From: Perkinsela sp. CCAP 1560/9
Lineage: Eukaryota; Protista; Euglenozoa: Kinetoplastea
Length of the DNA: 64,000 nucleotides
Assembly (NCBI GenBank): GCA_965644495.1
Contig: CBFFSA010000009.1
Location: 248,001 to 312,000, forward strand
Direction of reading: 5' to 3'
The position numbers and the translations under genes were made by a program. Shown here piece after piece: positions 12,989 through 64,000 of this stretch. Under the pieces are notes generated by a model that worked only from the letters and a program-made list of their open reading frames with translations, was not told where the DNA came from and ran no database searches. Positions within the stretch are counted from its first letter, which is position 1. Every line of letters begins with the position of its first letter.

Positions 12989-14034
12989 TCAATGATTCTC
13001 CAGCTTTATCTGTGTGTTATATACGCACAAACCGAACTCTTGCACATCTTCAGGGAATGGCGATTTTGTTATGTTGCTACGCAAGTTCACATTATACGAT
13101 AGTTGATGTTCATGCGCTCGCTGGCGCAGAGATACAGCCCTTGATGCGACGGCCGATATCATCAGCGCAATCCGCAATGGCGGATGTCGCACCGAGGGGC
13201 ATTCGACACGGACTCTGTCGGTAGAGGGGGTCTAGGCAACTCGCCCTCTCTTTACGCAGCCGGAGGGGCGCACTGCAACCGACTCGGTCCCAGTCGGTAG
13301 AGGTGGTCCAGGCAACTCACTACCTCTTTACGCAGCCGGAGGGGCGCACTGCAACCGACCGCTGCCTCGCGATAATACAAGGCAGAGTCACGCCCAGTGA
13401 TCCTCAAGGGAAGCCACCATGGCGCATGGCTCCCCGGGAAGGAAAAGGCGCGAAAGGAAGAAAGCCGGGGAGGGAAGAAAACTCACTAAAAGAGTGAGCC
13501 GGGGAGGGGTGATGGGGTGGAAGCGCGTCCCCTGCTTCACCGAGGAAGAGGGACAGTTTCGGCCTTAGTGCCGGCCGGCAACGGGCATATAAACAGTAAG
13601 ACTATGCCCGTTGCCGGGGAAAGAAAAGATGAACTAAAGGAAAATCAACAAGGTACAGAAACTGTATCTTTATCGTACAGACTATGTGGGAGATGAATCA
13701 AGTTCATAGTGCCTGTCAAATCTAGTTGACCCCAGTCCACGTGGCTGACTTCTTCCCGCTCGTTACAACTCACACCTTCCCACTCACATGCTGGCGTGTG
13801 ATGACGCCACGATTCTTCCAAGTTGTGGACTTCAGCGAGGAGACGAACAAGGTGATACTCGTGAGGTAAATTCGCAGCGCTCACTTTGGCAATACGCGAT
13901 CTCGTCTTTGCAGTTTGTTCAGCAGAATGAGTGTTGGAAGGTATTGGGCTTTCGACTTTACGTCGTTTAGTCGATGGTCGCTGAGTATCCGAACATGTGA
14001 CCCGCACGATCGTGCGTAGGGTTAAGCGCAGCAT
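12989..14034 (-). pseudogene. LRR-A gene whose central repeats are replaced by an SL-capped element
   Basis: N-terminal part 13674-14034 (to ...LPHSLYD) and C-terminal part 12989-13101 (LSYNVNL...ENH) match intact paralogues; the intervening repeats are missing. Confidence 0.9.
13102..13673 (-). mobile_element. Short non-autonomous RLE-retroelement derivative with SL-like 5' end
   Basis: SL-like 28-mer at 13646-13673; hairpin 13563-13640; 3' end motif tcatgcgc..gcgcagagat shared with RLE elements at 14777 and 63111. Confidence 0.8.
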
Positions 14035-14099
14035 GTAAAGTAAGATGGCAATTTATATTATGAAAGTGAATTTATTTTTAGACATTGTTTTTAGTGTTT

Positions 14100-14403
14100 T
14101 ATACAGCGGTGTTCGGAGACTGTTCTCAGACAAAGTACCTTTTTTTTTGAACTACATGGAACTTTTGAAATTGTTGCACAATAAATAATGGTCCTCGCCA
14201 CAGACAACATCGCGGCAAAAAGTAAAATTACGAAAGGATATATCGCAGTGTCTCATGTTTGCTCGATCGTAAGATTTATTTCGAAATGGAAGCTAGAAAA
14301 GAAGTTACACCTCAGCATAAGATGGATACCTGGACATCAAAATGCTGCAGAAACACTGTCTCGTAACAGCGACATTACATCAAGTCGCAATACGGCAACA
14401 TGA
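14100..14403 (+). pseudogene. DIRS/VIPER-type RNase H C-terminal fragment
   Basis: VLATDN...ITKG...IRWIPGHQNAAETLSR matches the YR-retroelement RNase H motif TDN...WIPGxxNxADxLSR; second copy at ~50880-51180. Confidence 0.75.
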
Positions 14404-14663
14404 GAAATAGTTTGAACAGAAATAGATTTGCGACGCTGTCATTTTAAACCAGATTCCGACCCCAGTGAAATATTAGACACCAGGTTCATATACTGTACTC
14501 CCCCTTTTGAGGTAAGAAAGTTTATAAGATCTTCCAAAAACAATAACATTTGTTGAATGAATGAAGCTCCCCCTAAATCCCCCGCCCACACATTTTTATT
14601 CCCTTTATCATGCTCTTTATTCCCTTTAAATTCTCTTTATTCTCTCTATCTCTTTTATTCGGT

Positions 14664-14776
14664 TCAATGATTCTCCAGCTTTATCTGTGTGTTATATACG
14701 CACAAACCGAACTCTTGCACATCTTCAGGGAATGGCGATTTTGTTATGTTGCTACGCAAGTTCACATTATACGATA
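14664..14776 (-). pseudogene. LRR-A C-terminal fragment, truncated at an RLE element insertion
   Basis: Identical to 12989-13101 and ends at the same nucleotide (attatacgata). Confidence 0.9.
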
Positions 14777-15767
14777 CAATATGATATTCATGCAGTTTAT
14801 CTGCAGAGATTGATACCCAGAAGACGCATGACACTGAAGGGAGTTCAGTGCCCGAGTTGAGCTGTTGAGCTTTCCCCTGGCACCTACTTCAATGGCCAGG
14901 AGAAATGTGGCTGGATTCGACATTTTCCTTTGTAGATACATAAGGATGCCCATACTTCTGCATCTTCCGTTCGTGTGAGGAGATAAAGTTTTCCTCCCAC
15001 GGAGATGTCAGTTCGAGTATGAACTCAGAACCGTTCTTAAGTTTGATCCATCCATCAGGTCGGAGGGACGTTTCCTGCCCGCTCAGCCAGGTTGGCGGAT
15101 TCTGATAGTGAGCGAGGTCAAAGTGACACTGTGCGGTTTCGGGGGATTGTCGTATAGCATCTGCAAGGGCGTGTAGGATGAGGTTATGACGGAAGGTATA
15201 CCGCCCCTGTTGCAGAGCGACCTTGTAGCCTGTGAGAACGTGGCTCACAGTTTGTACGTCTTCTTTGCAAATGGGGCATTTAAGGTTCGAGTGGGACTGA
15301 GGCCCCAGCGGTGTAAGGCGGATCGGGTCGGAAGCGGTGTCTGTGTCAGAACACATGAAGAAAATCTGGAGAGCGACGTACTTTTTATATTGCACAGAGC
15401 AGCAGCGAAGTCTTTCGCGAGGTCGTCTTCTGTAGCCATGCGAAACCACTGCCCCGCGATTGGTGCTCGACGCTGCACAGCTTCTGAAAGATGTCTTTCA
15501 TATTCATGTTCAATGTACTGCCGTGTCGATGCGTGATTTTCACTGCGGTCGTACAACTCGACGACTTGTCGCACTTGTCCGGAAGAGCGTTTGTCGAGCT
15601 CACGACGGATGCGATATCTCAGCGCTTGTTGCACTGCTGGATCACGAGATTTTTTCATCTGTTCAACTGCTGTGCCTGTGCAGAGTAACCAAAGCTTAGA
15701 CAGGCTGGTGAGAGCCCAGCCGCGTTCAGAGTACAGAACTTCGCTCGTGGTCAAAAGGGCATATTTT
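14777..15767 (-). mobile_element. 3' part of an RLE non-LTR retrotransposon (HERO/NeSL/R4-like), frameshifted
   Basis: CPIC...HVLTG zinc knuckle, GRYTFRHN, RPDG, LELTSPWEEN, K..KY, IEVGARG. Confidence 0.85.
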
Positions 15768-15777
15768 GATAGTACAG

Positions 15778-16310
15778 TATATGGAAGGCCCTCGCGAAGG
15801 GCAATCCAGGTTCCTTATTGTTCCCGAGGTGGAATCGACGTTTGACTAATAAACTTATAAATGATGCAGCTCACCACTTGAACACTCGAACATGGACAAC
15901 ACTCGAACATGGACTATGCATTCATTGCGGCATGGGAAGGCCACTGAGCTTCGAGTCCGTGGTGTTCCTATTTCAGAGAGGCAATTAATGGGACGATGGC
16001 GGTCTCACTCGTCAGAACAATCCAATGTCACAGCCTACCAGCGCCAAGGGAGTCCAACTCTCCGTAACTAACCAGCATGTGACATCCAATGTTACAGCCT
16101 ACCAGCGGGAACATGAGAGTGTTGCGGTACTTCACCATGTCTAACTGCCCTGCAGCATGCTAAGTCCAGCCCTATACGGTTCGAATGTCATCGGCAAGAC
16201 TGACACATCCAATTCAAGGCGTACAACTCGACCGAATGATCGCTCCCCCCTCCTCTCCCGGTCTTTGAGCGACCTGCTCCAGGCTTGGGACTGGAAATTG
16301 CGGAGTTAAG
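15778..16310 (+). pseudogene. YR C-terminal fragment plus downstream repeat
   Basis: FLIVPEV...MHSLRHG...GRWRS; near-identical to the 12191 block. Confidence 0.8.
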
Positions 16311-16655
16311 AAGCCACATGCGACGTACATAAAGTAAACAATACGTTTTTGTAAGACAACTTCAATCAAATCACAGTTCTCAGACATTGCTTTTAGACTG
16401 TTATACACGTTGTGGATGTGTTGTCTGTTGTGCACATTTTTTGCAATGGTGTTGAGCGACAGAAATTAATCAAGGGGGTACGGCAGGTCGTACACTTTTT
16501 TACGGTAAGAAAGTTTATAAGATCTTCCAAAAACAATAGAATTTATTGAATGAATGAAGCTCCCCCCAAATCCCCCGCCCACACATTTTTATTCCCTTTA
16601 TCATGCTCTTTATTCTCTTTAAATTCTCTTTATTTTCTCTATCTTTTTATCTGAT

Positions 16656-18295
16656 TCAATGATTCTCCAGGTTTATCTGTGTGTTATATACGCACAAACC
16701 GAACTCTTGCACATCTTCAGGGAATGGCGATTTTGTTATGTTGCTACGCAAGTTCACATTATACGATAAATCCAAAGTCATCAATGAAGATGGGAGCTTC
16801 GCCAAGTTGACATCACCAGAAAACATATTGCGCGACAAATCAAGGTGCCAAATCCTCGAAGGAAGTTGCCGAAGATCGAGTTCGCCGGACAATTGATTTC
16901 CAGAGAGATTTACTTGCCGAATGTTAGGCGGAAGCAAAGTCAAATCAAGTGGCCCGGTAAGACGATTTTCGCGAAGGTTCACACTTTGCATATTAACCGG
17001 CAGACTCGTCAAACATACAGTTCCATTGAATCTGTTGCTATGCAAAGTTAAATGATGGAAGCAGTAGGGAAGAGAAGTCAAGTCCAACTCGCCTTCAAAC
17101 CGATTTTCGCACAGAATAGTGTTTTGTCATGCAGGGCAAGACCTGCAGAGATAATTAGGGCCCAGCAGGGGTAGGCGCAATCAACACTCCCTGCTGGACC
17201 CTTTCGGCCTCCGCGGCGACACAGGGGAAAGCTCGGGATATCATCCCCAGGAAAGCGAAAAGAAACGGCCTCATCGGGATAAGATATCCCGCGATACTCA
17301 GTGAGCGCAATGCACCAGGAAAGATATACGGATTTGTGGGACGCAGATGGTATTCCCGTCGTACATGCTACAAATGACCTCCATGGTTCATGATACAACA
17401 TGGTCAGGGCCATGGATGCATGCTGGCAAATGGAGTCATGGTTCATGATACATCTTGGGCATCGGGGTCCCACATAATCCGCCACGGCTGGTGAGCAAGA
17501 GAGGTGCATAGGACATCCTCTAGAACACGCATACAACGTGTTTGCTCGCCGTGTGGGAGACTTCAAGCGTTTGGAAGCCTCCTCCGCGAAGTACCGGTGT
17601 CGCGTGATGGTGAAGGCACGTCGCGTAGTCCCGTAGAAGGGTCCTGCAGCGCATGGGGACTCGGAACCGTGTTCGAGCGGGGTGGTGGGAGATGAAGGAA
17701 GGGAGGCGCACCCCTGCTTTACGACAAGAGGGACAGTTCCTTTCCTAGCGCCATCCGGAAACGGGCATGCGCATAGTAAAAATATGCCTGTTTCCGGGAG
17801 AGAAAAGATGAGCTAGGAAAAAAACAACAAGGTACAGAAACTGTATCTTTATAGCTAGCGATCGCAGTTCCGAAGGCAAGCGCGTGAGCGGTACTGCACC
17901 TTCTAGAGCGTTCTGACGCGCATCAAAATCATACAGACTATGTGGGAGATAAATCAGGTTCATAGCACCTGACAAATCTAGTTGACCCCATTCCATGCGG
18001 CTGACTTCTTCCCGCTCGTTACAACCCACACCTTCCCACTCACATGCTGGCGTGTCAAGACTCCACGATTCGTCCAAGTTGTGGACTTCGGCGAGGAGAC
18101 GAACAAGGTGATACTCTTGCGGTAAATTCGCAGCGCTCACTTTGGCAATACGCGATCTCATATTTGTAATTTGTTCATCGGAATGGGTGTTCGAAGATAC
18201 TGGAGTTTCGACTTTACGACGTTTAGTCGATGGCTCCTGAATATCCGAACATACAGCATGAGCCGTACGATCATGTGTAGCGTCAAGCGCAGCCT
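16656..18295 (-). pseudogene. LRR-A pseudogene interrupted by a 738-bp SL-capped insertion
   Basis: Removing 17116-17853 rejoins ...LRSLA|LCENRFEGELDL; start codon is AGG and there is a small indel near 18250. Confidence 0.9.
17116..17852 (-). mobile_element. Short non-autonomous element with SL-like 5' end; clean insertion with at most a 1-bp duplication
   Basis: SL-like 28-mer 17825-17852; hairpin 17741-17820; 3' motif tcatgcagg..cctgcagagat. Confidence 0.85.
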
Positions 18296-19276
18296 GGAAA
18301 GTAAGAAGGCAAATTACCGGTGAAACGGTTATTAAGGATAAAAGTAATTAAGGCAGAACGAATTTAAAAATTAATTATTGCTTTAATTAAAGTTGCGCCA
18401 ATCTTAATTAAAAATAACCGTAATATAATCCACTCATATTTGAATACTTCACTGTATTTATATAATTAAATTAACTAATTAGCTAGGGGGGACCTTCGAT
18501 GAGTCTTCATCGAAGGTGATTTTTAATTTTTTGCCTTTGAACGATTTCTTATATCGGCTGTTACATGAAACTTATAATTTCATTTTAAGTTTAATAATTT
18601 ATTTTCTTTCTCTGAATTCTGACTTTCCGCATTCTCTGACATTCTTTTATAATGACCAACCAACGAGATTCGATTAATCACAACCCGGACGCTATGCTTC
18701 TAGAAGCTTAGAACCTTGGAGGGTGCCACCTACCGAGAGCATAGGCGTGGCCCACTGGGGGACGCCCCAGCCACCGTACAAGATCCCCGCCTCCTTAATC
18801 CTGCGCTCTAGTGTGATGCTCCCTTGCGCCCAATTTCACTCATTGTCCAGCGCTAAACTGCGTGAAGCGTTGGCGCAGTACCCTGGTCTCTGAGAGACCT
18901 GCTCCAGGCTTGGGTCTGGAAACTGCGGAGTTAAGAAGCCATAGGAATTAAGAAGTCAAAAGCAAACAACACTTTTTTTAAGACAAATTATATTAAATCA
19001 CAGTTCTCGGACATTGCTTTTAGTCTGTTATACACATTGTAGATGTGTTGTCTGTTATGCACATTACAATGGTGTTGAGCGACAGCAATTAATCAAGGGG
19101 GTACGGCACGTCGTACACTTTTTTGAGATAAGAAATTATACGTATAAAAGTTTCAAAAACAATAGAATTTATTGAATAAGTGAAGCTCCCCCTAACCCCG
19201 CCGCCCATATATTTCTCTCTATCTTTCTCTCTATTCTCCTTGAATTCTCTTTATTCTCTCTATCATTTTATTTGAT

Positions 19277-20173
19277 TCAATGATTCTCGAGCTTTATCTG
19301 TGTGTTATGCACGCACAAACCGAACTCTTGCACATCTTCAGAGAATGGCGATCTTGTTATATTGCTACGCAAGTTCACATTATCTGATAAATCCAAACCA
19401 ATCAATGAAGATGAAAGCTTCGCCAAGTTGACATAAACAGAAAACATATTGCGCGACAAATCAAGGTAAGAAATCCTCGAAGGAAGTTGCCGAAGATCGA
19501 GTTCGCCGGACATCTGATTTCCAGCGAGACTTACTTGCCAAATGTTAGGCGGAAGCAAAGTCAAATCAAGTGACCCGGTAAGACGATTTCCGCTAAGGTT
19601 CACATTTTGCATATAGAACGGCAGACTCGTCAAACATACAGTTCCATTGAACCTGTTGTCATTCAAAGTCAAATCTACGAAACAGTGCGGAAGGGAAGTC
19701 AAGTCCAACTCGCCTTCAAACCGATTTTCGTACAGAGTTAGTGATCGCAGTTCCGAAGGCAAGCGCGTGAGCGGCACCGCACCTTCTAGAGCGTTCTGAC
19801 CCGCATTAAAATGGTACAGACTATGTGGGAGATGAATCAGGTTCATAGTGCCTGCCAAATGTAGTAGACCCCATTCTATGCGGGTGACTTCTTGCCGCAC
19901 CAAACAACTCACACCTTTCCACTCACATGCTGGCGTGTCAAGACTCCACGATTCGTCCAAGTTGTGGACTTCCGCGAGGAGACGAACAAGGTGATACTCT
20001 TGGGGTAAATTAGCAGCACTCACTTTGGCAATACGCGATCTCATATTTGTAATTTGTTTATCGGAATGGGTGTTCGAAGATACTGGAGTTTCGACTTTAC
20101 GACGTTTAGTCGATGGCTCCTGAATATCCGAACATGTGAGCCGCACGATCGTCTGTAGCGTTAAGTGTGGCAT
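19277..20173 (-). CDS. LRR-A protein, 298 aa, intact
   Basis: Cys cap (ACEWKGVSC) and 23-aa LxxLxLxxNxFxGxLDLxxLP repeats. Confidence 0.92.
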   Translation of the reverse strand: MPHLTLQTIVRLTCSDIQEPSTKRRKVETPVSSNTHSDKQITNMRSRIAKVSAANLPQEYHLVRLLAEVHNLDESWSLDTPACEWKGVSCLVRQEVTRIEWGLLHLAGTMNLIHLPHSLYHFNAGQNALEGAVPLTRLPSELRSLTLYENRFEGELDLTSLPHCFVDLTLNDNRFNGTVCLTSLPFYMQNVNLSGNRLTGSLDLTLLPPNIWQVSLAGNQMSGELDLRQLPSRISYLDLSRNMFSVYVNLAKLSSSLIGLDLSDNVNLRSNITRSPFSEDVQEFGLCVHNTQIKLENH

Positions 20174-20231
20174 GTAAAGTTAGAATGTAAATTATTGTTT
20201 TTTTAAAAATTAAAAATAATTTTATGAATGT

Positions 20232-33004: not shown

Positions 33005-33901
33005 TCAATGATTCTCGAGCCTTATCTGTGTGTTATATACGCACAAACCGTACTCTTGCACATTTTCAGGTAATGGCGATCTTGTTATATTGCTACGCAA
33101 GTTCACATTATCTGATAAATCCAAACCCATCAATGAAAATGGAAGGTTCGTCAAGTCCACATCACCAGAAAACATATTGCGCGACAAATCAAGGTGCCGA
33201 ATCCCCGAAGGAAGTTGTCGGAGATCGAGTTCGCCGGACAACTGATTTCCAGAGAGATATACTTGACATATGTTAGGCGGAAACAAAGTCAAATCAAGTG
33301 AGCCGGTGAGACGATTTCCGCTAAGGTTCACATTTTGCATATTGACCGGCAGACTCGTCAAACATACAGTTCCATTGAATCTATTGTCATTCAAAGTCAA
33401 ATCTTCGAAACAGAGCGGAAGGGAAGTCAAGTCCAACTCGCCTTCAAACCGATTTTCGTACAGAGTTAGTGATCGCAGTTCCGAAGGCAAGCGCGTGAGC
33501 GGTACTGTCCCTTCTAGAGCGTTCTGACACACATCAAAATCGTACAAACTATGTGGGAGATAAATCAAGTTCATAGTACCTGACAAATCTCGTTGGGTCC
33601 ATCTCACGTGGCTGACTTCTTCCCGCTCGTTACAACCCACACCTTCCCACTCGCATGCTGGCGTGTGAAGACTCCACGATTCGTCCAAGTTGTTGACTTC
33701 CGCGAGGAGACGAACGAGTAGATACTCCTGAGGTAAATTCGCAGCGCTCACTTTGGCAATACGCGATCTCGTCTTTGTAGTTTCTTCAGCAGAATGAGTG
33801 TTGGAAGGTATTGGGCTTTCGACTTTACGTCGTTTAGTCGACGGTTCCTGAATATCCGAACATGTGAGCCGCACGATCGTTTGTAGCGTTAAGTGTAGCA
33901 T
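33005..33901 (-). CDS. LRR-A protein, 298 aa, intact
   Basis: Paralogue of 19277. Confidence 0.92.
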   Translation of the reverse strand: MLHLTLQTIVRLTCSDIQEPSTKRRKVESPIPSNTHSAEETTKTRSRIAKVSAANLPQEYLLVRLLAEVNNLDESWSLHTPACEWEGVGCNEREEVSHVRWTQRDLSGTMNLIYLPHSLYDFDVCQNALEGTVPLTRLPSELRSLTLYENRFEGELDLTSLPLCFEDLTLNDNRFNGTVCLTSLPVNMQNVNLSGNRLTGSLDLTLFPPNICQVYLSGNQLSGELDLRQLPSGIRHLDLSRNMFSGDVDLTNLPFSLMGLDLSDNVNLRSNITRSPLPENVQEYGLCVYNTQIRLENH

Positions 33902-53858: not shown

Positions 53859-53883
53859 TTTTTTTTGTCATCCCCCGAGTCCA

Positions 53884-55782
53884 TTAGCGCACGCCTCTGC
53901 GGTACCAGTTTTGTACCGCGGCATGCGCTATCTGGGCGTTCCCATTTTGGATGGCTACCCCGATTGCCATGATAAAATGGCTGAGGCAACCATTCTTCTT
54001 GCCGGTGGCCTTCCGAGCGACCAGATTTAGAAACTGAAGGGTCTCGGGGCCGGGGACACTGTACGTGGTGAAGGCCAAAGGGAAGAAATCCATCTCCCTG
54101 GCCCCCGCCATTTCCTCGTGAGTGCGCCTTTTGACACGCTCTGCCTGCCTTACGGTGAAGGAGGGCTCAGCTGCCTCCTTATCCACGTTGGATGGGGCCA
54201 GTGGGTTTACCACCGTCACGTCCACTAGGACTAGCTCCCGCCCCAAAAGGAAACAAATGTCCGGTCCCCGACCGTTATCGAATCTAGGTTCGACGAGGTC
54301 TGGGGAGAATCCGTACTGGATTAATAGGTTGCGGAAAGTTTCCTTGACCCCCTTGTGGCGAGAGGCTTGTGTCTTTCCCCGAACCTTTTTACAATCCATG
54401 GCGTGGACGCAGAACTCCTCATTTTTGAGGGCCGCGCCACAAACACATTGGATTTCTGGTTCGGAGGTGGGGGCCACCATGTACCGGAGTCTAGCGGCGG
54501 TCTCCCATTCGGGATCCCGCATGTAGTACTCCGGCCTGTTCGGCCACGCATTCATCCACTTGGTCGAGTGGATGTTCTGGATCTGTCGCATACAGACCAG
54601 ATGCGTGGCCGACGGTGCCTTGTCCAAAGCAGCCGCCCCATAGGCGCGTCTTTGCTCCCTGGCGGGGGTGCCGGGGGGCTGGCCTTGTAAGGCCTTGACT
54701 GCTTTGGCCTGCATGTCCTCCGCTTTGTCTTCGAAGGGGATGGTGCCCAGGAAGTCCGCCGTAAAAAGTTTGTTTACGAACGGCGTCGTTCCCATTGCAC
54801 CCATCCCTCCGATAAGAGCTTCGGAGCATGCGGTGATGGCCGCGTCCACCTGCAGGTTCGCCTTTTTGGTCACCCCCGGTTCGTACGTGCGAACTATGTA
54901 GTTCCACCGGGGGCTCCCGCATAGGCGGAGGAGAGGGAGGGCGCACTGTCTGGGTAAATCCTTGAGTTTACCCAAGAAATTAGTGACCTTGGGGACCTTG
55001 GAGAGGACCCATTCCTCTTCCCGCGCTTCCGAGGCGCCAATGTACGCCCCCAGAAGTTTCAGTCCCCCCGGACCGTGTTGCATCCGGCTCCCCGAGAAAG
55101 CCGAGTACAGGTCCGGGTGGCGGGTAGCCACCTTGCACTTGGCCATGTTGAGCTTTAAGCCCATAAACTTGATCTCCTTTTCCAAGGAGCCAAGGGCCTT
55201 AACGCACACCTCGGATTCCGCGGCTATGGTTATATCGTCGATATATGCCCGTAGCTTAAGGCAACCCGAGTATTTGGCTGCCACGGCCGAGATGGCCCCC
55301 TGAAACCCTAAGGCGAACAGGATGGGCGCCATCGGGTCCCCTTGTTTGACCCCCCGGGGGCTAGGGATATGTATCCCCTCCCCCAGGTGGAGTTTACTAG
55401 GGGTCCCGTACCCGAAAAGGGAGATCCCTATCATTGGGGATAGGTTAGGGTACCTTTTTAGGGCGCGGAATATGACCGCGCGTGAAATGCTATTGAACGC
55501 ATTTTCCAAATCGGCCGCCACGACCAACTCGTCGGGCCTGTCACGAAAGTGATCTCTCACCTCGTATATGACATGCTCACAGCCTTGGGTGTATTGGGCT
55601 CCAAATTGAAGGCCCTGAAACACTGCTGGGAGATGGTCCCTGACCTGTTCGAGGGCCAGTAGCCCCGCGAGCTTCAGTAGGACCTCCACCATGGCTATGG
55701 GCCTGTAGGATGAGTGATGTCCCACCGGGGCCCCAGGCTTATTGAAAAGCTTGAGGTTTGCTCCGGTGAGAAAATCCCTCAT
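53884..55782 (-). CDS. Reverse transcriptase + zinc knuckle + RLE endonuclease (CRE clade)
   Basis: YRPIA, DLENAFN, GVKQGDP, YIDD, LLG, CVC...HAMDC, RH, GPD...VDV. Confidence 0.92.
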   Translation of the reverse strand: MRDFLTGANLKLFNKPGAPVGHHSSYRPIAMVEVLLKLAGLLALEQVRDHLPAVFQGLQFGAQYTQGCEHVIYEVRDHFRDRPDELVVAADLENAFNSISRAVIFRALKRYPNLSPMIGISLFGYGTPSKLHLGEGIHIPSPRGVKQGDPMAPILFALGFQGAISAVAAKYSGCLKLRAYIDDITIAAESEVCVKALGSLEKEIKFMGLKLNMAKCKVATRHPDLYSAFSGSRMQHGPGGLKLLGAYIGASEAREEEWVLSKVPKVTNFLGKLKDLPRQCALPLLRLCGSPRWNYIVRTYEPGVTKKANLQVDAAITACSEALIGGMGAMGTTPFVNKLFTADFLGTIPFEDKAEDMQAKAVKALQGQPPGTPAREQRRAYGAAALDKAPSATHLVCMRQIQNIHSTKWMNAWPNRPEYYMRDPEWETAARLRYMVAPTSEPEIQCVCGAALKNEEFCVHAMDCKKVRGKTQASRHKGVKETFRNLLIQYGFSPDLVEPRFDNGRGPDICFLLGRELVLVDVTVVNPLAPSNVDKEAAEPSFTVRQAERVKRRTHEEMAGAREMDFFPLAFTTYSVPGPETLQFLNLVARKATGKKNGCLSHFIMAIGVAIQNGNAQIAHAAVQNWYRRGVR

Positions 55783-56470
55783 CGTGGGGGGGAGGGAGTT
55801 GATTAGGACAGCTGTTGGTGGGGAGGGGGATCGGAGCTATGGTTTCCGACCCCTCGAGGTGATCCCGTTTGCGAAGCTCCCTAGCCAGCTGCCTTTGGGA
55901 CACTTTGTCCTCGGGGAAAAACAGAAACCGTTTAACCCCGAGGAGTAGATCCCAGGCGATCTTAATTTTGCCTTCATACGACTTCCCCAGGAAGTTGCTA
56001 CACACAGACTTAGTGTAGTCCTTCCAGGCAGGGCATTGAACTGCGTATAGGGTACGCAGCGAGCCCCTTTCAAGGAGCTGTGCCAGGCTGTCCGGGGAGG
56101 GCGTGATGTCACCCGGCTCCGTCACCGCGCCTTGGGTATTGGGGGGCGTGACACTGGGGGCCTTGTAGGGAGGGTCCGTCCCAGCTAGATGGGGGTAAGG
56201 CGGCGGAGGAGAGGTGGGGCACTCGCATTCCTGACGGGAGGGCCTACGAGGAGATGTAGAGGCCGCGATTCCCTCCATAATAGTACCTTCCCCACCCGGG
56301 GTAGGGGTTGTAGCGCCGGGGGTAAGGACATTTTGGGTCTCCCTCCGGGCCTGCCACGTCTTAGAACGAGGACCTGGGTTTGCCTCGATACAGCCTCTGC
56401 GGAGGTTGCATTGAACAACACGGGTGGTCCAGCCCGTTTCGCTTACCAGGGTTTCTGTGGGAAGGAAACA

Positions 56471-58030
56471 TCAAAGGAGCCCTTCTTCGTATTTGCGGGG
56501 CTCCCAGGCACCGGTCATGATCCGGGGGATACCCAAGACCTCGTTCAGACCGGCGGGGATGTCGTGCGCCGCACTCACCCCTGGGGCGGAGATCATGCCG
56601 TGGTGTGTCCCGTCATACACCCTGACTGTGGCCCCATCGCTAGGCCCTGGGGGAAAGGGGGGAAGGGAGAGGCTGACCGCGACTCTTTGCGCTCTGTCCA
56701 GCCCTTCAGAGTCGGTGATGGGGGTGGCTTCGCTGGAAATGTCCTTCAGCAGCAGGCTCTCTCCGGGGACCCCTAAAGTGTTGCCCACAATGCTGATTGT
56801 AGCTTGAAACGAGCGTTCGGGCGGGCAGGGGATGACTATATGACCCAAGCGCTCGGGGCCAATGTCGAGGAGGATTTTGAGGACCTCTTCCCCTATCGGC
56901 TCGTATGGTTTATCCGGGACATCCCCACAGGGTGCTCTCGCCTGTATCGGGTACGCGCCCGACCTGTCCGCCGGTAGAGATGGGGGGAAAGGAGAGGGGG
57001 GAGGAGGGGAGTTGGGAATGGGGAGAGGGAAGGAGCGTAGGGGGGGCACGAGCCATGGAGGTCCTTTAGCCACTGTGTTGACCTGGGCCATGCGCAGGCG
57101 GGCTTCCTCAGCGCAGAACCCCTCATAGTACGCCAGCATGGAGGCGTACCGCTCTGTTTTGATCCGGAGGGCTTCAGGGGCATGCTCCTTTAACAGGGCA
57201 ATAGAAGCTTTCCTTAGACGCTTGGGACCGTGCACCTTTACTAGGCGCGCCTGTAGAGCTACATGGTGGGGTTGGGCTACCCCACATTCGATGCAGACCA
57301 AATGGCCCGCATTGATCAGTAGAAAGCGATCCTCGATGGCTTTCTGGGCCGCGTGCAGACCACTGACAGCCTCCAGGGTCAGCTCACGGTGTGCCCGGGC
57401 CTCCATTTCCTCAAGGGAGATCCTCTCGTGCTTCGAGTGTAGGGTCGAGAGGAGACGCAGAGAGACAGAGCATCTTCCAGTTTGGGCTAGAGGGAGCCCC
57501 GAGCTAGAAGGGGAGGGGAGGAGTTTGAAGCGCACAGCGTCCATCGCCTTGAACTGTTGCCCTAGCGTGGGGAGTTTCAACGAACGCTCCGACGGGGCGG
57601 GGGCGTCGCTGTCCATCGCGTCCGACGTGATCGGGGGGCGGTCGCCAGGCCAGGCGTCGAGATGCGGACGTATGACGTGCTCCGACTGTCGGAGGTGGGG
57701 AGGGGAGCGAAGGAAACGTTGGCAGCTTTCCTCAAGATGGGGGTGGGGGCGACCGTAGTCAAAGCTCCGGGATCTGCCCCGAGAGGAAGAAGAACGTGGG
57801 ATCCTGCGGGCTGTGAAGTTGGCTCGGGAGGATCGAGAGGAAGACGTGGGACGGGATGGAGGGGTCCCTGAGGCTTGCGTCGAGGCACGCACTCTAACGT
57901 CGTTCCTGTGCCGAGAGCGCAGAGTAACGCACTCCTCACACAGGCGGTTGTCCCGCCTGGTTGGCACGAAAGGGAGGCCACAGAAGTCGCAGGCACATGA
58001 CTTGTGCTGCTCCTTGACACGGACGACCAA
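56471..58030 (-). CDS. N-terminal region of the CRE element (Cys/His fingers, low-complexity)
   Basis: CDFC...CEEC and CIEC...H motifs; frame is open upstream to ~58108 and continues past the TGA into ORF 55739-56278. Confidence 0.65.
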   Translation of the reverse strand: MVVRVKEQHKSCACDFCGLPFVPTRRDNRLCEECVTLRSRHRNDVRVRASTQASGTPPSRPTSSSRSSRANFTARRIPRSSSSRGRSRSFDYGRPHPHLEESCQRFLRSPPHLRQSEHVIRPHLDAWPGDRPPITSDAMDSDAPAPSERSLKLPTLGQQFKAMDAVRFKLLPSPSSSGLPLAQTGRCSVSLRLLSTLHSKHERISLEEMEARAHRELTLEAVSGLHAAQKAIEDRFLLINAGHLVCIECGVAQPHHVALQARLVKVHGPKRLRKASIALLKEHAPEALRIKTERYASMLAYYEGFCAEEARLRMAQVNTVAKGPPWLVPPLRSFPLPIPNSPPPPSPFPPSLPADRSGAYPIQARAPCGDVPDKPYEPIGEEVLKILLDIGPERLGHIVIPCPPERSFQATISIVGNTLGVPGESLLLKDISSEATPITDSEGLDRAQRVAVSLSLPPFPPGPSDGATVRVYDGTHHGMISAPGVSAAHDIPAGLNEVLGIPRIMTGAWEPRKYEEGLL

Positions 58031-58454
58031 GTCCGGCCTCGCCTTCTTCAGCTCCTCGATGGAGAGCTGGGGCAGCCCCTTGACCCCTACGGAGGGGTGG
58101 GGGCTGGTTATATTTTCACTCTTTATAATTAGTATAATTAGTATAATTAGTATAATTACTAATTACTATATTATTTATTATAGTATACTATATTATACTA
58201 ATTACTAATTAGTATAATTAGTATTTTCACTCTCTATATTTTCAATCTTTTTTTCACTTGTTTTCAATCATCGAGTGTAGAGCGGAAGTTATACATAAAA
58301 TATAAAATACATAAAAACACAAAAAATTATACATAAATTTACATGTAGAATGTCTTATTTTATAAAAACTGTTCAGTAATGTCTGTCAGTGAAACTCGTG
58401 GCAGTCAAGGCAGTCAGAAACGATAGAAAATGCCAATCTTGCACGATGTGTCCA

Positions 58455-59111: not shown

Positions 59112-59333
59112 ACCACAATATATCGTCGTCATGTACAGGGGTGCGGGTCTAAAGGTGGGGGGGGGTCTAAAATTCGTAAAAGTTGTCCAATTTTGGAAAA
59201 TAATAGCGCATTGGATAGCTCTCATAGAGTTGTATGTTTTAGGCGCATTAAAATCCTGTGATTTTAACGTACATATTTTTTGATACAACATTTCGCATTT
59301 TTCCCTCGCAGGAATTACATTTTTTACTAGAAA

Positions 59334-59861: not shown

Positions 59862-60337
59862 TGTGCTGGCGTAAATGATATGAGATGCTGTAGGAGATTC
59901 GTAGTAATACGTATTGACATACTCTACATTCAATCTGTAGTAAACCCTGTTCCGGGTTATTGTGCCCCCCCTGCACAATAACTGGCTCTAGGCACAATAA
60001 CTAAATATTGGAAAAACCCAAAAAAAAGGTAAAAAAAAATTGGCGCCGCTTCGCGGCGCCTTTTTTGTGCACAAACACGTTCATGTGCAGAATGAGTTCA
60101 ATTTAACGAGTGCGTTGCTGAACAAACACAGTTATGTTCGAGAAAATGGGAGTAAAATATTTTAGAGGGAGGGCACAATAATAGTGGTCGTTTCCACTTA
60201 TTGTGCCCCCCCTGCACAATAAGTAGCTCTAGGCACAACAACCCGGAACAGGGTTTAAGTTTACTACAAACTGATACAAGCTGATACAAATTACATTATT
60301 ATTTTCCCGATACATGTTCATCGGAAAAATGTTCATC

Positions 60338-60430
60338 GGGCATTGACATAGTAGAAATATGCCTGTGTCCGGGAGAGAAATGATGAGCTAGGAAAAAAAG
60401 TACAACAAGGTACAGAAACTGTATCTTTAT
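60338..60430 (-). mobile_element. 5' end of an SL-capped element inserted in an LRR gene
   Basis: SL-like 28-mer 60403-60430 plus half of the conserved hairpin; the rest is lost. Confidence 0.8.
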
Positions 60431-61050
60431 CGTTAAAGAGCCCAGCGTGGGTGGGAGAGAGGTAAGCACTAAAGGGCCCGTAAAGCCGTTCTCAGAGGCC
60501 CAAACCGTTTGAAGGGTACGGGGAAGTCGAGTGAGGTCAAATTCCCCGGTTAATAAATTATTTGAAATGGAAAACACTTTGAGTTTTTGAGATAACGCCT
60601 CTAGTTCTATAGGACCTGAAAAAGGTTCTCGTTGAGCTTAAGTGTGGAGACACTCTCGGGAAGCTGATTCAGCCGTGTGGTAAGAGCACCAGAGAATTTA
60701 CAGTGTTGTAACTCAAGACAAGTCAGAGCCCGTGGCAGTGAGCTCCATGGAATCGTTCCGATCAGCTCCGTCCCGTAAAGAATACAAGTGTTGACCGTGT
60801 CGAGGAGAAACTTCCAGCTCAGTTCGCCTTTTAGTCGTTGGTTCGTGAACTCAATATATTCGGGTCTTCCGTCTTCATCTAAATCTACGCCCTCCCATTC
60901 GGTTAATGAGACGGATTGTTTCCATGTAGAATGCGGATTCGTCACGTGCTTTAAGAAACAAAGAAGTTGCACATGAGGGGGCAACAAGGTGTTCTTTAGC
61001 TTAGCTCCGCGTGAGACGTCCGCGCAAACAGTTTTCTGGAACTTTAAAAG
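60431..61050 (-). pseudogene. LRR pseudogene (divergent subfamily), frameshifted and truncated by the SL-capped element
   Basis: ORFs 60607-60987 and 60299-60577; reads ...LPPTLGSLT directly into the element. Confidence 0.82.
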
Positions 61051-61390
61051 GACAATCCTAAAACTCTAGGAATTGTAATTATCCCCTTTCTTATACTTCT
61101 GCCGTTATCAGGACTTTTAGAAGAACACTTTTAGAAGGTCTTGAAGGGGCAACCTGAACTTTTGAAATTCTTTACGTATAAAGGGGGTTCACAAAACAGT
61201 ACTAACAGTAATAATTTATTTACGGGAAATCCATATTTTCCATACGGGTATGTAGCTAGGGGACTATCGAGCTAAGGGACAAAACATAAAAATGTTTATG
61301 AATCACATAATTTATGAATTATTTTCTAATACTTTATTTCATGAAAGGGATCTGAATTCATAAATTCATAGTGCGTATTAAATTATTATC

Positions 61391-62104
61391 TTAATCTAAG
61401 ATCACAAGCTTGGTATTCGATACATCAATGTGATTCCTTAACCGCCGATGGAGTTTACTCGCGAATATTGTACCTTCGAGGAGCTCATTGTTTTCTAATG
61501 AAATGGCATCTAGCTTCTCCGGTACGAGCGATAAATCTATAATCCCTTCGAATTTGTTTCCAGACAAGTACAATGATTCAAGAGTGCGTGGGAGTGCCCC
61601 CAAATCTAGTTTTCCCGTTAACAAGTTATCGCTAGCGTCAAGATATGCCAGATCGATGGGCAACTGTGTAAGGCATATATCACCAGACAATTCATTTCTT
61701 TCCATCCACGCTGCAGTAGAAAGCTTCGGAAGTCTGGTAAGATCCGGATTGCCTGTAAATTTGTTCTCCCCTAGATAGAAAGCAGTAAAATTTACTAAAG
61801 GGAAAAGGTCACTTAGGACAAGTTCACCACGTATATAGTTGTGTTCAATGTCGAGCGTCTCAACGGATATTGGAATATACTCAAATTTCATGGATCCACT
61901 CAGGTTTTAATGGTTCCACTTTATGTTTGTAACTTTCTCCTCAGAGTTGCACTTGATGCCTTTCCATTTGCAAGCGGAAACATCTGAACTCCAGCTCTCA
62001 TGATGAGTGTACAAACTGCTGGTGAGCCGCTCAAGATCCATTTCTTGTGGTACACTCACTGCACGAACTTTCGAAGGGCGCGTGGATGGAGCTTGGGAAT
62101 CCAT
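61391..62104 (-). pseudogene. LRR gene with a single in-frame TAA (61907-61909)
   Basis: ORFs 61907-62104 and 61391-61891 are in the same frame; ACKWKGIKC cap and LRR repeats. Confidence 0.82.
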
Positions 62105-63011
62105 TACACGTAAGTTAGATAAAATATTAAGGGTATTTAAAAAATACTACTATTTTTTTCCGGCAATGCCTGTCGACTATGTTGCAATGTCATTCTTACA
62201 TGCATCATTAGCGGACACCCGCCTTCCTCCACTCTTTTACCGCGGAGGATAGTATAGCGGCGTTGCCTTTTTGTACAGCCACATTAATGGCTTGTAGTGC
62301 ATGACGCAGGAAACCTTTTCTGTCATACGTATATACCTTGCGATCTCCTTTTAGGAGGAGTACTATTTTTTTTACTTGTGCAGAGGCTCTTCAATTCTTT
62401 TGCGCATCAATTCAAAAAGAATTCTACCATTCATTACCGACAAAGCATTTATTAAAGGATAAATGAATAAAAATACCCCTAAAAACCCCTGGCCACCAAT
62501 AAGGCGCCCCGCCTTATTTTTTGCATTAGGGGTCATGGTAGGGTTATGATACCATATTTTCGTTTTGAGATCTTTAATTTATATTAATTTATCCGTTAAT
62601 AAATAAATTTAATACGCCTAAAACGTACGGCTAGGGGGGACCTTCGATGAGTACTCATGGTAAGTTGTAGACTTTCGATGAGTAATCATCGAAGGTGTTT
62701 TTGACATTTTCATTTTTTTGCAATTTAGCAAATTGAATGGCCTAGTCTTCCCCTCCGGAGGCAAGACCGAACTGTGAGCGAAACCCACTTCTGGAGGCAA
62801 AAGCCCCCGTTTGCCAAGTCCCAACTGTGAGCGTAGCCCTGGGACAGTAATATATTTTTCGATGGCGGTCCTTGAGAAACCTGCTCCAGGCTTCGGGCTG
62901 GAAACTGCGGAGTTAAATAAGTTAAGTGACGTAGTTAAAGTAAAAAATACGCTTTTGTAAGAAAACTTCAATCAAATCACAGTTCTCAGACAATGCTTTT
63001 AGTGTGTTATC

Positions 63012-63110
63012 AAGTGTCCCGACAAAACGATTTTCGCTAAGGTTCACACTTTGCATATTCACCGGCAGACTCGTCAAACATACAGTTCCATTGAATCTGT
63101 TGTCAGTTAA
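63012..63110 (-). pseudogene. LRR-A internal fragment abutting an RLE element 3' end
   Basis: LTDNRFNGTVCLTSLPVNMQSVNLSENRF; an LRR-A 3' flank lies at 62870-63010. Confidence 0.82.
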
Positions 63111-64000
63111 GTTTAATTTATCATACCTTTATAAGGCAGAGAATATGCGGATAGGCCTGGGGGGCGCATATGACGCTGCCCAGACCTATCTTTTACAGAC
63201 GTTATACCCGTCCTTCTGTCCAAACGGCAGACTCACGGTTCTGCCAGATAATGAAACTGCCTCGAAGGGCGGTCTGCATTAGACTTTCTCGACATTTTTC
63301 CGCAAGCTTTGTGTCCTCGTCAAAGAGGAGGTTGAGGTTTCGACAAGATGTGAGTAACGAGCCGCGGGCTCCCACTTCGAATACAACAAGGGTCGTCCTA
63401 GGGTGATTAATGCGTCGTTCATGGAAGAGAGCATTATATTTACGGGATTTGCCCTCGTGCGCCTGAGACTGGTTCTCTTCCCAGGGCACAGTGAGCTCAA
63501 TGATGAACTCACTTCCATCCTTAAGTGTAATCAAACCGTCGGGGCGAAGAAGGTCCTCACTGGTGCCGAGCCATGCCGGGGCATTCCTAAATCCGGGGAT
63601 ATCTAGGTGTACGCTCTCGGTATACGGCGAACGCAGCAAGTGTTTTCCGAGCTCTTCAAGTAACATGTCATGACGGAGGGTGTATCTCCCTTGCTGAAGG
63701 GACTCTTTGCACCCCGAGAGCACGTGCCTTGTTGTTTGAGGTTCGAGTTTACATATGGGACATGTTACACTCGCACGCCGGAGACCCCAAAGCCGAAGAT
63801 TGGTTCTGGATGGTAGGGGTGAAAGCGTTAGTACTGAAGCTGCGAAGCGAGAAAGTTTTTCACTGTTGAGGTTGTTCAGGGCCGCTGAGAACTCTTTCGC
63901 GAGATCAGCCTCGGAGGGGAGGCTCCACCATTTTGCTGCTGTCGGTGCCCGTCTCTGAAGCTGATTTATGACGTAAGATTCATGGTTATCACGGGCTATC
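63111..64000 (-). mobile_element. 3' part of an RLE non-LTR retrotransposon (continues beyond the window)
   Basis: CPIC...HVLSGC, GRYTLRHD, RPDG, IELTVPWEEN, KSRKY, FEVGARG; homologous to 14777. Confidence 0.88.

What the first reader, a model, noticed from the sequence alone, without database searches (positions are those of the whole stretch)
13102..63723. RLE retrotransposon family that appears to target LRR genes at a fixed register of the LRR repeat
Seen: five related insertions (13102, 14777, 17116, 60338, 63111) lie in LRR coding sequence, all co-oriented with the gene. Of the seven visible junctions, six fall within about 3 nt of the start of the codon for the third Leu of LxxLxLxxN: LRSLA|LCEN (both ends of 17116-17853), LGSLT| (60430), |LTDN (63110), and L|SYN twice (13101 and 14776, two different elements at apparently the same base). 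The seventh (13674) is about 2 codons upstream. Different repeats and two LRR subfamilies are hit. All four visible 3' ends share tcat-[stem-loop]-agaga about 8-11 nt from the junction, linking the short elements to the RLE-coding ones. Established: RLE clades (R2, R4, NeSL, CRE) are usually site-specific for rDNA, SL or snRNA genes or microsatellites. Inference: this family uses a protein-coding repeat motif of a multigene family as its target, which I do not know to be described.
Basis: partly seen in the sequence, partly recalled or inferred. Interest (0 to 1): 0.92.

Follow-up and report, generated by a model that had tools for sequence, protein, structure and literature searches.

The report
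Retrotransposon family that targets LRR codons
A diverse family of R2-like retrotransposons in this spliced-leader-using protist inserts, always in the gene's own direction, just before the codon for the third leucine of leucine-rich-repeat units of a gene family with roughly a thousand or more members; a protein-coding repeat is a target class I found no report of for site-specific retrotransposons.

Summary
The window has five related minus-strand insertions in LRR genes. All four 3' junctions lie within 1 nt of the start of LRR codon 6, the third Leu of LxxLxLxxN. Two different elements sit at the same base of duplicated gene tails.

The 60430 junction really lies at 60438/60439, because 8 nt read as codons are spliced-leader (SL) sequence.

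I sampled 84 independent 3' junctions genome-wide:
- 21 carry a strict LRR motif with codon 6 starting -1 to +3 nt from the junction.
- Only 4 strict hits fall at the other 64 offsets, and 1 is antisense.
- Counting degenerate repeats, about one third are in register, as are 8 of 15 intact full-length copies.
- These insertions occur in at least 11 of 16 subfamilies and in unrelated LRR genes.

The element has one ORF with RT, a CCHC knuckle and a PD-(D/E)xK endonuclease, collinear with R2. Its N-terminus carries 2-6 Cys/His motifs that match no known family. It also has:
- a covarying 3' hairpin that it shares with short non-autonomous partners;
- a 5' end that starts inside the SL exon.

This is a strong preference, not strict specificity, since about 60% of the flanks are not LRR. 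I class it as a new variant of a known kind. The clade and the recognition mechanism remain unresolved.

The parts
13102..13673 (-). e13: short (about 570 nt) non-autonomous element. Its 5' end is the SL fragment, and 13672-13673 could be either SL nt 9-10 or target. Its 3' end is the hairpin motif plus an 8-nt tail. It replaces 421 nt (six repeats) of the LRR gene.
14777..15780 (-). e14: 5'-truncated autonomous copy with a CCHC knuckle and PD..E..K endonuclease, frameshifted. Its 3' junction is at the same base of the paralogous gene tail as e13. Its 5' end is joined to intergenic DNA.
17115..17855 (-). e17: short (about 740 nt) non-autonomous element. It is a clean insertion between LRR codons 5 and 6, with a 0-1 nt target duplication.
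60337..60438 (-). e60: only the first 100 nt or so of a short element. Here the SL fragment starts at SL nt 3. The 5' flank is an LRR gene of a second subfamily, and the junction falls at codon 2+1 nt.
   Evidence: read directly from the sequence
63111..64000 (-). e63: 3' part of an autonomous copy that runs off the window (open frame of 726 aa in the genome). It has the CCHC knuckle, the PD..E..K endonuclease and the 3' hairpin motif. LRR codon 6 follows at 63110-63108.
13110..13132 (-). 3' terminal motif of e13 (CTCT, hairpin, ATGA in the sense orientation).
14788..14810 (-). 3' terminal motif of e14.
17127..17152 (-). 3' terminal motif of e17.
63121..63143 (-). 3' terminal motif of e63.
16538..18316 (-). 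Target gene d16: an LRR gene split by e17 into 16538-17114 and 17856-18316.
12873..14045 (-). Target gene d13: gene tail at 12873-13101 and 5' part at 13674-14045, on either side of e13.
14548..14776 (-). Gene tail d14, 3' of e14. It is 97.5% identical to the d13 tail.
63027..63110 (-). LRR gene fragment 3' of e63. The insertion site lies one repeat downstream of the e17 site in the paralog.
33005..33901 (-). Intact 298-aa LRR paralog used as the empty-site reference. Further intact copies lie at 19277-20173, 40674-41570 and 49854-50819.

Best explanation
This is a family of non-LTR retrotransposons built like R2. Each autonomous copy has one ORF of 1350-1860 aa carrying a reverse transcriptase, a CCHC knuckle and a C-terminal PD-(D/E)xK restriction-like endonuclease. 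Shorter elements of 490-740 nt carry the same 3' terminal hairpin, so they are presumably mobilised in trans by the autonomous copies.

Shown by sequence:
- The junction positions, the orientation and the register.
- The cleanness of the insertions. The upstream end is usually joined at the same codon 5|6 boundary, with a 0-4 bp duplication, and sometimes at an upstream repeat, which deletes whole repeats.
- The protein domain architecture.
- The covarying 3' hairpin.
- The SL fragment at the 5' ends.

Inferred:
- The element protein recognises DNA of the 23-codon LRR unit of a very large gene family.
- It nicks the antisense strand at the boundary between codons 5 and 6, just before the third Leu of LxxLxLxxN.
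- It primes reverse transcription on its RNA's 3' hairpin and short A/T-rich tail (target-primed reverse transcription), which puts the element in the sense orientation.
- Sense insertion into genes of polycistronic units would let the element be co-transcribed. Its RNA carries the spliced leader, since copies begin inside the SL exon.
- The LRR family therefore serves as a multicopy safe harbour, as rDNA does for R2.
- The N-terminal Cys/His motif array is the likely DNA reader.

Specificity is relaxed: about one third of all sampled copies, and about half of the intact ones, sit at this site.
For: - Window junctions.
- Genome-wide sample of 84 independent 3' junctions: 21 strict LRR hits at offsets -1 to +3, 4 at the other 64 offsets, 1 antisense. 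HMM registers extrapolated from downstream repeats agree.
- The flanks are diverse genes.
- The behaviour is spread over at least 11 of 16 subfamilies, which form one clade (SH-aLRT 99, quick tree).
- Both junctions reconstitute a continuous LRR in e17, L063, L083, L088, L103/L023, L102/L018 and L110/L027.
- Two elements occupy successive repeats of one gene (L115/L110).
- The LRR family gives 152 scored matches out of 1407 first-look candidates, roughly 0.5-6% of the 21 Mb. About 0.1 in-register hits would therefore be expected by chance in 84 junctions.
- Architecture: RVT_1; a collinear alignment from RT to RLE with solved R2 proteins at E 1e-32, including the CCHC and the PD/E/K positions; the CCHC knuckle in all 14 full-length ORFs.
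- 3' hairpin: 31 distinct hairpins, with A-T/C-G/G-C/T-A at pair 3 and G-C/T-A/C-G/A-T at pair 4. Short elements share only this terminal stretch of about 28 nt.
- SL: the 38-nt exon is read from tandem 297-bp SL RNA genes (L062:1798-1835:-). Family 5' ends start at SL nt 9-12 in most copies and at nt 3, 6 or 8 in a few.
Against: - About 60% of sampled 3' flanks are not recognisably LRR and share no motif. One copy lies antisense in an LRR gene (L026).
- At the DNA level, the only conserved target positions I can see are those the LRR consensus itself imposes. What the protein actually reads is therefore unknown.
- There is no biochemical evidence and no usable RNA data. All the runs are contigs and none is on record as RNA.
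- The sample is 84 junctions out of at least 145 RLE matches and 123 short-element candidates, not the whole genome.
- Junction positions carry an uncertainty of 1-3 nt.
- Copies have no AG in front of the point where the SL fragment meets the 5' UTR. How progeny RNA regains an SL at exactly that point is unexplained.
Confidence: 0.85

Rival explanations
1. The protein recognises a short, degenerate DNA or structural feature, for example spaced T, AA, TT and GG at 6-nt intervals. LRR repeats merely supply this feature by the thousand. The enrichment would then be a by-product of target abundance rather than specificity evolved for LRR genes.
For: The only conserved positions in the in-register flanks are the LRR consensus positions. 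About 60% of insertions lie elsewhere. The LRR family is very large.
Against: The non-LRR flanks show no trace of the same spaced motif. The sense orientation and the 5-nt register hold across many subfamilies. In practice this rival differs from the main explanation only in emphasis.
Confidence: 0.1
2. Integration is random and the elements are retained by selection. Insertions are tolerated only in dispensable LRR genes, so those are the ones that survive.
For: The LRR genes are a redundant multigene family. Many non-LRR insertions also exist.
Against: Selection for tolerance cannot produce a 5-nt register or exclusive sense orientation inside a 69-nt repeat. It also cannot place two different elements at the same base.
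Confidence: 0.02
3. A few ancestral insertions were spread by gene duplication or gene conversion within the LRR arrays.
For: The window shows recent segmental duplication of gene tails (12831-13101, 14505-14776 and 16498-16768 are 97-99% identical). L003/L004 and L055/L056 are duplicated loci.
Against: With duplicates removed, the in-register flanks do not resemble one another. They carry elements from at least 11 subfamilies with different 3' tails. The duplicated tails of d13 and d14 hold different elements.
Confidence: 0.02

Closest known systems
R2 (28S rDNA-specific RLE LINE of animals)
   Same: One ORF running RT, linker, CCHC, PD-(D/E)xK endonuclease. It aligns collinearly with solved R2 proteins at E 1e-32. 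Both have a structured 3' end and no poly(A). Both make near-blunt insertions with tiny or no target duplications. Both insert in the sense orientation into a transcribed multicopy gene.
   Different: The target is a protein-coding repeat rather than rDNA. The N-terminus has no C2H2 or Myb domain but 2-6 copies of a CxHxC-x5-CxHxCC motif with no Pfam match. The 5' end is an SL fragment, and no HDV-like ribozyme was detected with Rfam. Specificity is relaxed.
CRE clade: SLACS, CZAR, CRE1/2 of trypanosomatids
   Same: RLE LINEs of Euglenozoa that are tied to the spliced leader. SLACS and CZAR insert between nt 11 and 12 of the mini-exon (PMC5814959). Relative to the conserved SL core, the usual 5' boundary of this family falls at that same position, 8 nt before the core.
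   Different: Those elements sit inside SL RNA genes, with SL sequence on both sides. Here the two tandem SL RNA gene copies examined are uninterrupted (L062). The SL fragment is the element's own 5' end, and the flanks are LRR codons. Clade membership was not testable because no named reference sequences were available.
NeSL-1 / Utopia / R4-Dong / HERO (other RLE clades)
   Same: RLE LINEs that mostly target multicopy sequences. [quoted passage not shown] Some Utopia and HERO families show only a weak preference, as this family does.
   Different: None of the listed targets is a protein-coding repeat motif. No protease or RNase H domain was found here.
TcTREZO of Trypanosoma cruzi
   Same: A site-specific repeated element in a kinetoplastid, mostly inserted into genes or pseudogenes of a surface multigene family, MASP (PMC5814959).
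   Different: [quoted passage not shown] It is not described as targeting a fixed codon register of a repeat unit. Here the autonomous enzyme-coding partners are identified.
Stringent LINE/SINE pairs that share a 3' stem-loop (from general knowledge, not tested here)
   Same: The short elements share only the terminal 3' hairpin and tail with the autonomous elements.
   Different: The heads of the short elements are an SL fragment plus a non-coding body, not a tRNA, 5S or 7SL head.
SL-relic retrogenes of dinoflagellates
   Same: Retrocopies keep a DNA-encoded remnant of the spliced leader at their 5' end (PMC12014239).
   Different: Those are retrocopies of host genes. Here the SL-tagged RNAs belong to a retrotransposon family with a fixed start inside the SL.

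Membership tests
RLE-type non-LTR retrotransposon (R2-like architecture) | Reverse transcriptase domain of the LINE type | tested here: met
   RVT_1 at E 2e-31, residues 836-1073 of the 1528-aa ORF. R2 and L1 RT structures match.
RLE-type non-LTR retrotransposon (R2-like architecture) | C-terminal CCHC knuckle followed by a PD-(D/E)xK endonuclease, downstream of the RT in the same ORF | tested here: met
   The CCHC knuckle is present in all 14 full-length ORFs. The alignment to R2 covers the CCHC, PD, E/D and K positions. The motifs are also visible in e63 and e14.
RLE-type non-LTR retrotransposon (R2-like architecture) | Insertion signature of target-primed reverse transcription: defined 3' end, variable or truncated 5' end, small or no target duplication | tested here: met
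   3' ends are sharp to within a few nt in each subfamily. Copies include 5'-truncated ones such as e14. Duplications are 0-4 bp, and some 5' junctions carry deletions.
R2 clade proper | N-terminal C2H2 zinc finger(s) and a Myb motif | tested here: not met
   No C2H2 pattern was found in any of the 14 ORFs. The N-terminal 700-900 aa give no Pfam hit at E up to 5. Instead there are 2-6 CxHxC-x5-CxHxCC motifs.
R2 clade proper | Insertion at the specific 28S rDNA site | tested here: not met
   The flanks are LRR genes or other DNA. None of the 84 flanks was rDNA, judging by eye and by the motif scans.
CRE clade (SLACS/CZAR/CRE) | Insertion inside SL RNA genes between nt 11 and 12, with SL sequence on both sides | tested here: not met
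   The SL fragment occurs only at the element's own 5' end. The tandem SL RNA genes in L062 are intact. The upstream flanks are LRR codons.
CRE clade (SLACS/CZAR/CRE) | RT phylogeny groups the family with the named CRE references | not testable with these tools
   No named CRE, NeSL, R4 or HERO sequences could be obtained. The nearest relatives are unnamed metagenomic and animal proteins.
Target-specific LINE | Most copies occupy one defined sequence position | tested here: inconclusive
   21-31 of 84 sampled 3' junctions and 8 of 15 intact copies are at the LRR codon 5|6 site. The rest are elsewhere. This is a strong preference, not strict specificity.
Non-autonomous partner (SINE-like) of the family | Shares the 3' recognition module with the autonomous element and inserts at the same target | tested here: met
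   The terminal hairpin and tail are shared. Short elements e17, L063, L083, L087, L088 and L098 sit in the same LRR register.

The most novel reading that the evidence does not exclude
The family combines two specificities. An N-terminal array of unclassified Cys/His motifs has redirected integration to a codon-periodic DNA pattern of LRR genes. The endonuclease, or the 5'-joining step, still acts at the SL position used by SLACS and CZAR, and it trims the element's own SL-capped cDNA so that copies begin at SL nt 10-12. On this reading the family would be a CRE-like lineage caught after a switch from the SL RNA gene to a protein-coding multigene family. Its deletions between repeats would also reshape LRR repeat number.
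Probability: 0.15. Interest if true: 0.9.

Novelty: new variant of a known kind. Interest (0 to 1): 0.8.

Why it matters
Site-specific non-LTR retrotransposons are known to target rRNA, SL, tRNA and snRNA genes, transposons, microsatellites and telomeres (PMC4640811). A family that picks a fixed codon register of a protein-coding repeat extends the 'multicopy safe harbour' strategy to a gene family.

It also poses a concrete recognition problem: how does a protein read a target defined mainly at the amino-acid level, across synonymous variation?

The family links transposition to polycistronic transcription and trans-splicing. It provides a natural set of diverged R2-like enzymes with a new DNA-reading module, at a time when R2 enzymes are being developed for targeted insertion (PMC13580325).

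Finally, it may be a mutational driver of repeat-number change and pseudogenisation in what is probably a surface-protein family. In e13, for example, six repeats were deleted.

Tried and rejected
- Rfam scan of ten full-length copies at E up to 1: no hit, so no HDV-like ribozyme or known 3' element was detectable.
- Pfam on the N-terminal 700-900 aa at E up to 5: nothing. ESM Atlas feature search of the motif region: nothing usable.
- Naming the clade: the word-index search, the exhaustive representative search and two cluster look-ups returned only unnamed or 'hypothetical' proteins from metagenomes, Artemia, a pseudoscorpion, a sponge and Trichogramma. A labelled phylogeny with CRE, NeSL, R4 and HERO could therefore not be built.
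- Tree of this genome's subfamilies and the unnamed relatives: the careful search did not finish, so only the quick tree is reported.
I used internal controls instead: the other 64 offsets, the antisense strand, and the 43.6 kb of non-LRR flanks.
- Sequencing runs: only contigs, none on record as RNA. They cannot show the 5' ends or the expression of the element RNA. The one useful result was a contig of a paralogous gene copy that lacks e17.
- One script that held typed repeat sequences was not run. I rebuilt the LRR profile from window coordinates instead.
- Hypothesis that the short elements start with SL RNA gene sequence (exon plus intron): rejected. The true SL RNA intron in L062 differs from what follows the SL in the elements.
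- Hypothesis that the family targets SL RNA genes, raised by L009, L042, L119 and L098: rejected. There the SL belongs to the 5' end of another element of the family. These are tandem arrangements, most simply explained by template jumps or by insertion at a resident copy's SL fragment.
- Relatives in another SL-using organism (ENA metagenome contigs L135 and L136): they carry an SL fragment at the 5' end (seen in L135) but end in a 5-nt microsatellite and are not flanked by LRR. LRR targeting is therefore not shown outside this genome.


Full report
CONTEXT

The window is G000:C9:248001-312000 of a 21-Mb, 110-contig assembly. The organism uses a kinetoplastid/diplonemid-type spliced leader. 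Two copies of the SL RNA gene, 297 bp apart in tandem in L062, give a 38-nt SL exon (L062:1798-1835:-) followed by a GT intron.

The minus strand of the window carries a tandem family of 298-aa proteins with an LRRNT_2-like cap and 23-residue LRR units of the form LxxLxLxxNxFxGxLDLxxLP. Intact copies lie at 19277-20173, 33005-33901, 40674-41570 and 49854-50819. The family is very large: a search of the genome with one member found 152 scored matches out of 1407 first-look candidates, nearly all open frames of 250-350 aa. That corresponds to roughly 0.5-6% of the genome.

THE OBSERVATION IN THE WINDOW

I aligned the disrupted copies with the intact paralog at 33005-33901, which fixes the junctions.

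- e17 (17115-17855) is a clean insertion. The upstream flank ends with LRR codon 5 and the downstream flank starts with codon 6. Any duplication is 0-1 nt. A contig in run X5, matching at about 90% and so probably from a paralogous copy, runs straight across the site, skipping 17115-17856; X5 is only guessed to be an RNA run.
- e13 (13102-13673) and e14 (14777 to about 15780) have their 3' junction at exactly the same nucleotide, one base into codon 6 of the last, degenerate repeat. The two gene tails are 97.5% identical. The elements themselves differ right up to the junction: one is a short non-coding element and the other a truncated coding copy. These are therefore two separate events.
- e63 (63111 to beyond the window) ends 0-1 nt before codon 6 of a different repeat, one unit downstream of the e17 site in the paralog.

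All four 3' junctions are thus within 1 nt of the same register.

The 5' junctions vary more:
- e17 is in register.
- e13 is joined six repeats upstream, with loss of 421 nt.
- e14 is 5'-truncated and joined to intergenic DNA.
The 8 nt upstream of the supposed start match SL nt 3-10, so the element starts at 60438 and the flank ends at LRR codon 2 plus 1 nt.

All five elements are on the gene strand.

WHAT THE ELEMENTS ARE

e63 and e14 encode a CCHC knuckle followed by a PD...E...K block.

A genome search with the e63 C-terminus found 145 matches, many inside open frames of 1350-1860 aa. I fetched fourteen full-length copies. Each has a single ORF with RVT_1. The ORF aligns collinearly, from the RT through the CCHC to the endonuclease, with solved R2 proteins at E 1e-32. 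L1 ORF2p matches only in the RT, at E 1e-19.

The N-terminal 700-900 residues have no C2H2 finger and no Pfam match. They do contain 2-6 copies of a conserved CxHxC-x5-CxHxCC motif.

The subfamilies are only 32-66% identical in protein. They nevertheless form one clade (SH-aLRT 99 in a quick tree; the careful search did not finish). Its sister group (support 83) is a pair of unnamed metagenomic elements; for one of them (P0052) the contig L135 shows a kinetoplastid-type SL fragment at the element's 5' end. The GC-rich RT element elsewhere in the window (53884-58030) is unrelated, at 21% identity.

ENDS OF THE ELEMENTS

3' ends. The sense strand reads CTCT, a 4-6 bp hairpin, ATGA, then a 6-12 nt A/T-rich tail. 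A strict pattern finds this in 62 of 84 sampled elements, as 31 distinct hairpins. Covariation is clear: stem pair 3 occurs as A-T, C-G, G-C and T-A, and pair 4 as G-C, T-A, C-G and A-T.

The short elements (490-740 nt) share only this terminal stretch of about 28 nt with the autonomous copies; one group shares about 78 nt. They insert at the same kind of site. They therefore behave as non-autonomous partners recognised through the 3' module.

5' ends. Full-length autonomous copies and short elements alike begin with the 3' part of the SL exon. The start is usually SL nt 10-12, and in a few copies nt 3, 6, 8 or 9. What follows the SL is not the SL RNA intron. The fragment therefore comes from trans-spliced RNA, not from an SL gene. 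Other SL-tagged retrocopies in the same genome mostly start at SL nt 3, so the nt 10-12 start is a property of this family.

GENOME-WIDE TEST OF THE TARGET CLAIM

I fetched the 3' ends of 80 RLE matches and 26 short-element loci. Junctions were placed where copies of the same subfamily stop aligning.

With duplicated loci removed (L004, L056) and the window copies added, there are 84 independent 3' junctions. A strict codon test required Asn at position 9 plus at least four of the positions 6, 11, 13, 15 and 17. It was applied at every offset from -12 to +56 nt:
- 21 junctions have codon 6 starting at -1 to +3.
- 4 hits fall at all the other offsets. One of these is displaced by an expanded TA tail.
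- 1 hit appears on the antisense strand.
- If offsets were uniform, 21 of 25 hits within 5 of 69 offsets would have a probability of about 1e-20.

An independent profile HMM of the 23-residue unit, built from the window genes, gives the same register. For L001, L002, L005, L013, L018 and L116 this comes from repeats one to three units further downstream.

Adding degenerate first repeats and indirect cases brings the in-register share to about 27-31 of 84. These cases are e13, e14, L001, L002, L116, L130 and L119 (the last reached through a tandem short element), with L020, L045 and L051 weaker.

Among intact full-length copies, 8 of 15 are in register. Two abut the SL of another element and five lie elsewhere.

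From the size of the LRR family, about 0.1 such hits would be expected by chance in 84 junctions.

The in-register flanks are unrelated genes. In-register insertions are found in at least 11 of the 16 multi-member DNA-level subfamilies.

Where both flanks are available, they reconstitute a continuous LRR unit with a 0-4 bp duplication or a few extra bases. This is the case for e17, L063, L083, L088, L103/L023, L102/L018 and L110/L027. In one gene, two elements occupy successive repeats in the same register (L115 and L110).

WHAT DOES NOT FIT

About 60% of the 3' flanks are not recognisably LRR and share no motif. In their 43.6 kb of flank, only 4 loci have any LRR hit: 1 sense (L119, explained above) and 3 antisense.

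Some of these flanks have identifiable causes:
- Some are the SL 5' end of another family member (L009, L042, L049, L119, and the 5' side of L098). These are most simply template-jump tandems.
- Some are secondary insertions of another repeat into the TA-rich tail (L021, L043, L053).
- Some are low-complexity sequence.

The rest are unexplained. The family therefore has a strong preference, not the near-absolute specificity of R2.

At the DNA level, the conserved target positions are only those the LRR consensus imposes: T at +2, AA at +10/+11, TT at +16/+17 and GG at +22/+23. What the protein reads is unknown.

UNEXPLAINED: THE SL BOUNDARY

The usual start of the SL fragment lies 8 nt before the conserved SL core. 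Relative to that core, this is the position between nt 11 and 12 at which SLACS and CZAR insert into SL RNA genes (PMC5814959).

Copies have no AG in front of the point where the SL meets the 5' UTR. A resident copy therefore offers no obvious acceptor for regaining the SL at that exact point. The few copies that reach SL nt 3-9 nevertheless argue that the template RNA carries a full SL.

Autonomous copies keep a TACTAAC box in the 5' UTR. No ribozyme was detected with Rfam.

I leave open whether the boundary reflects a reverse-transcription stop, a family-specific 5'-joining step, or a retained SL-directed cleavage.

MECHANISM

The most likely mechanism is R2-like target-primed reverse transcription.

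- Shown: sequence-defined 3' ends, truncated or variable 5' ends, near-blunt sites, a complete RT-CCHC-RLE enzyme, and a covarying 3' RNA hairpin shared with the non-autonomous partners.
- Inferred: a nick on the antisense strand at the codon 5|6 boundary; recognition of the LRR unit by the N-terminal Cys/His array; co-transcription with the host gene and trans-splicing of the element RNA; and occasional second-strand joining at another repeat of the same gene, which deletes whole repeats, as in e13.

COMPARISON AND NOVELTY

The nearest precedent for a protein-coding multigene family as target is TcTREZO in MASP (pseudo)genes of T. cruzi (PMC5814959). The review I read says its elements are made of sequences from different genome regions, and does not describe it as targeting a fixed codon register of a repeat.

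Six full-text searches found no report of an LRR-targeting retrotransposon.

I therefore file this as a new variant of a known kind: an RLE LINE with a new target class, a new N-terminal module and an SL-tagged 5' end. The clade (CRE, R2, R4, NeSL, HERO or new) could not be named with the tools at hand.

An earlier first-reader note of this scan on the adjacent window (s1-682852) had already flagged that full-length copies start with an SL fragment outside SL genes. I reached and verified the same point independently.

Noticed in passing
window 53884-58030 (-): A GC-rich element (57-62% GC against about 44% background) with RVT_1 and a C-terminal Cys/His plus PD..D..K-like block, in three ORF pieces. 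It is only 21% identical to the LRR-targeting family and sits on a very long branch in the tree. It looks like a second, unrelated RLE-type LINE.
   Followed up: partly
L062:1798-1835:- (G000:C1, about 661.3-661.6 kb): SL RNA genes, two copies 297 bp apart in tandem, define a 38-nt SL exon. The genome has 452 exact matches to the SL core. In my sample of 29 sites only two were SL RNA genes; the rest were DNA-encoded 5' ends of retrocopies or retroelements. Families other than this one start at about SL nt 3, and some carry nested partial SLs (L070-L074).
   Followed up: partly
L009, L042, L049/L114, L119, L098 (5' side): The 3' tail of one family member directly abuts the SL fragment (from about nt 11-15) of another member. 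These are tandem chimeras, as expected from RT template jumping. In L119 the composite is followed by an LRR in register.
   Followed up: partly
N-terminal 80-800 aa of the ORFs in L101-L114: There are 2-6 copies per protein of a conserved CxHxC-x5-CxHxCC motif with no match in Pfam or the ESM Atlas. A distant metagenomic relative (P0052) instead has precomputed zf-CCCH hits.
   Followed up: partly
5' UTRs in L102-L110, just after the SL fragment: A conserved TACTAAC box, which resembles a branch point, lies 10-30 nt after the SL fragment and shortly before the start codon. Its role is unknown.
   Followed up: no
L021, L043, L053 (3' flanks): A different repeat, beginning with a G-run, then TGAAAAC, then a long G-run, is inserted right at the TA-rich tails of three family members. 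This suggests another element with a preference for TA-rich sequence.
   Followed up: no
window about 59937-60268: A MITE-like element of about 330 bp with terminal inverted repeats of at least 17 nt and internal direct repeats. It lies about 70 nt from the point where e60 breaks off.
   Followed up: no
L115 / L110 (G000:C15, about 188-193 kb): Two autonomous copies from different subfamilies are inserted in successive repeats of one LRR gene, 21 codons apart, in the same register.
   Followed up: partly
L135, L136 (ENA metagenome contigs ERZ27265265 and ERZ27265271): The nearest outside relatives (33% identity) come from an organism with a kinetoplastid-type SL. In L135 the element also starts with a partial SL. 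Both copies end in a 5-nt microsatellite rather than the hairpin tail, and neither is flanked by LRR.
   Followed up: partly
window 12198-16770: Recent segmental duplications (97-100% identity) of gene tails and downstream intergenic DNA surround e13, e14 and e17. The arrangement is consistent with rearrangement associated with the insertions.
   Followed up: partly
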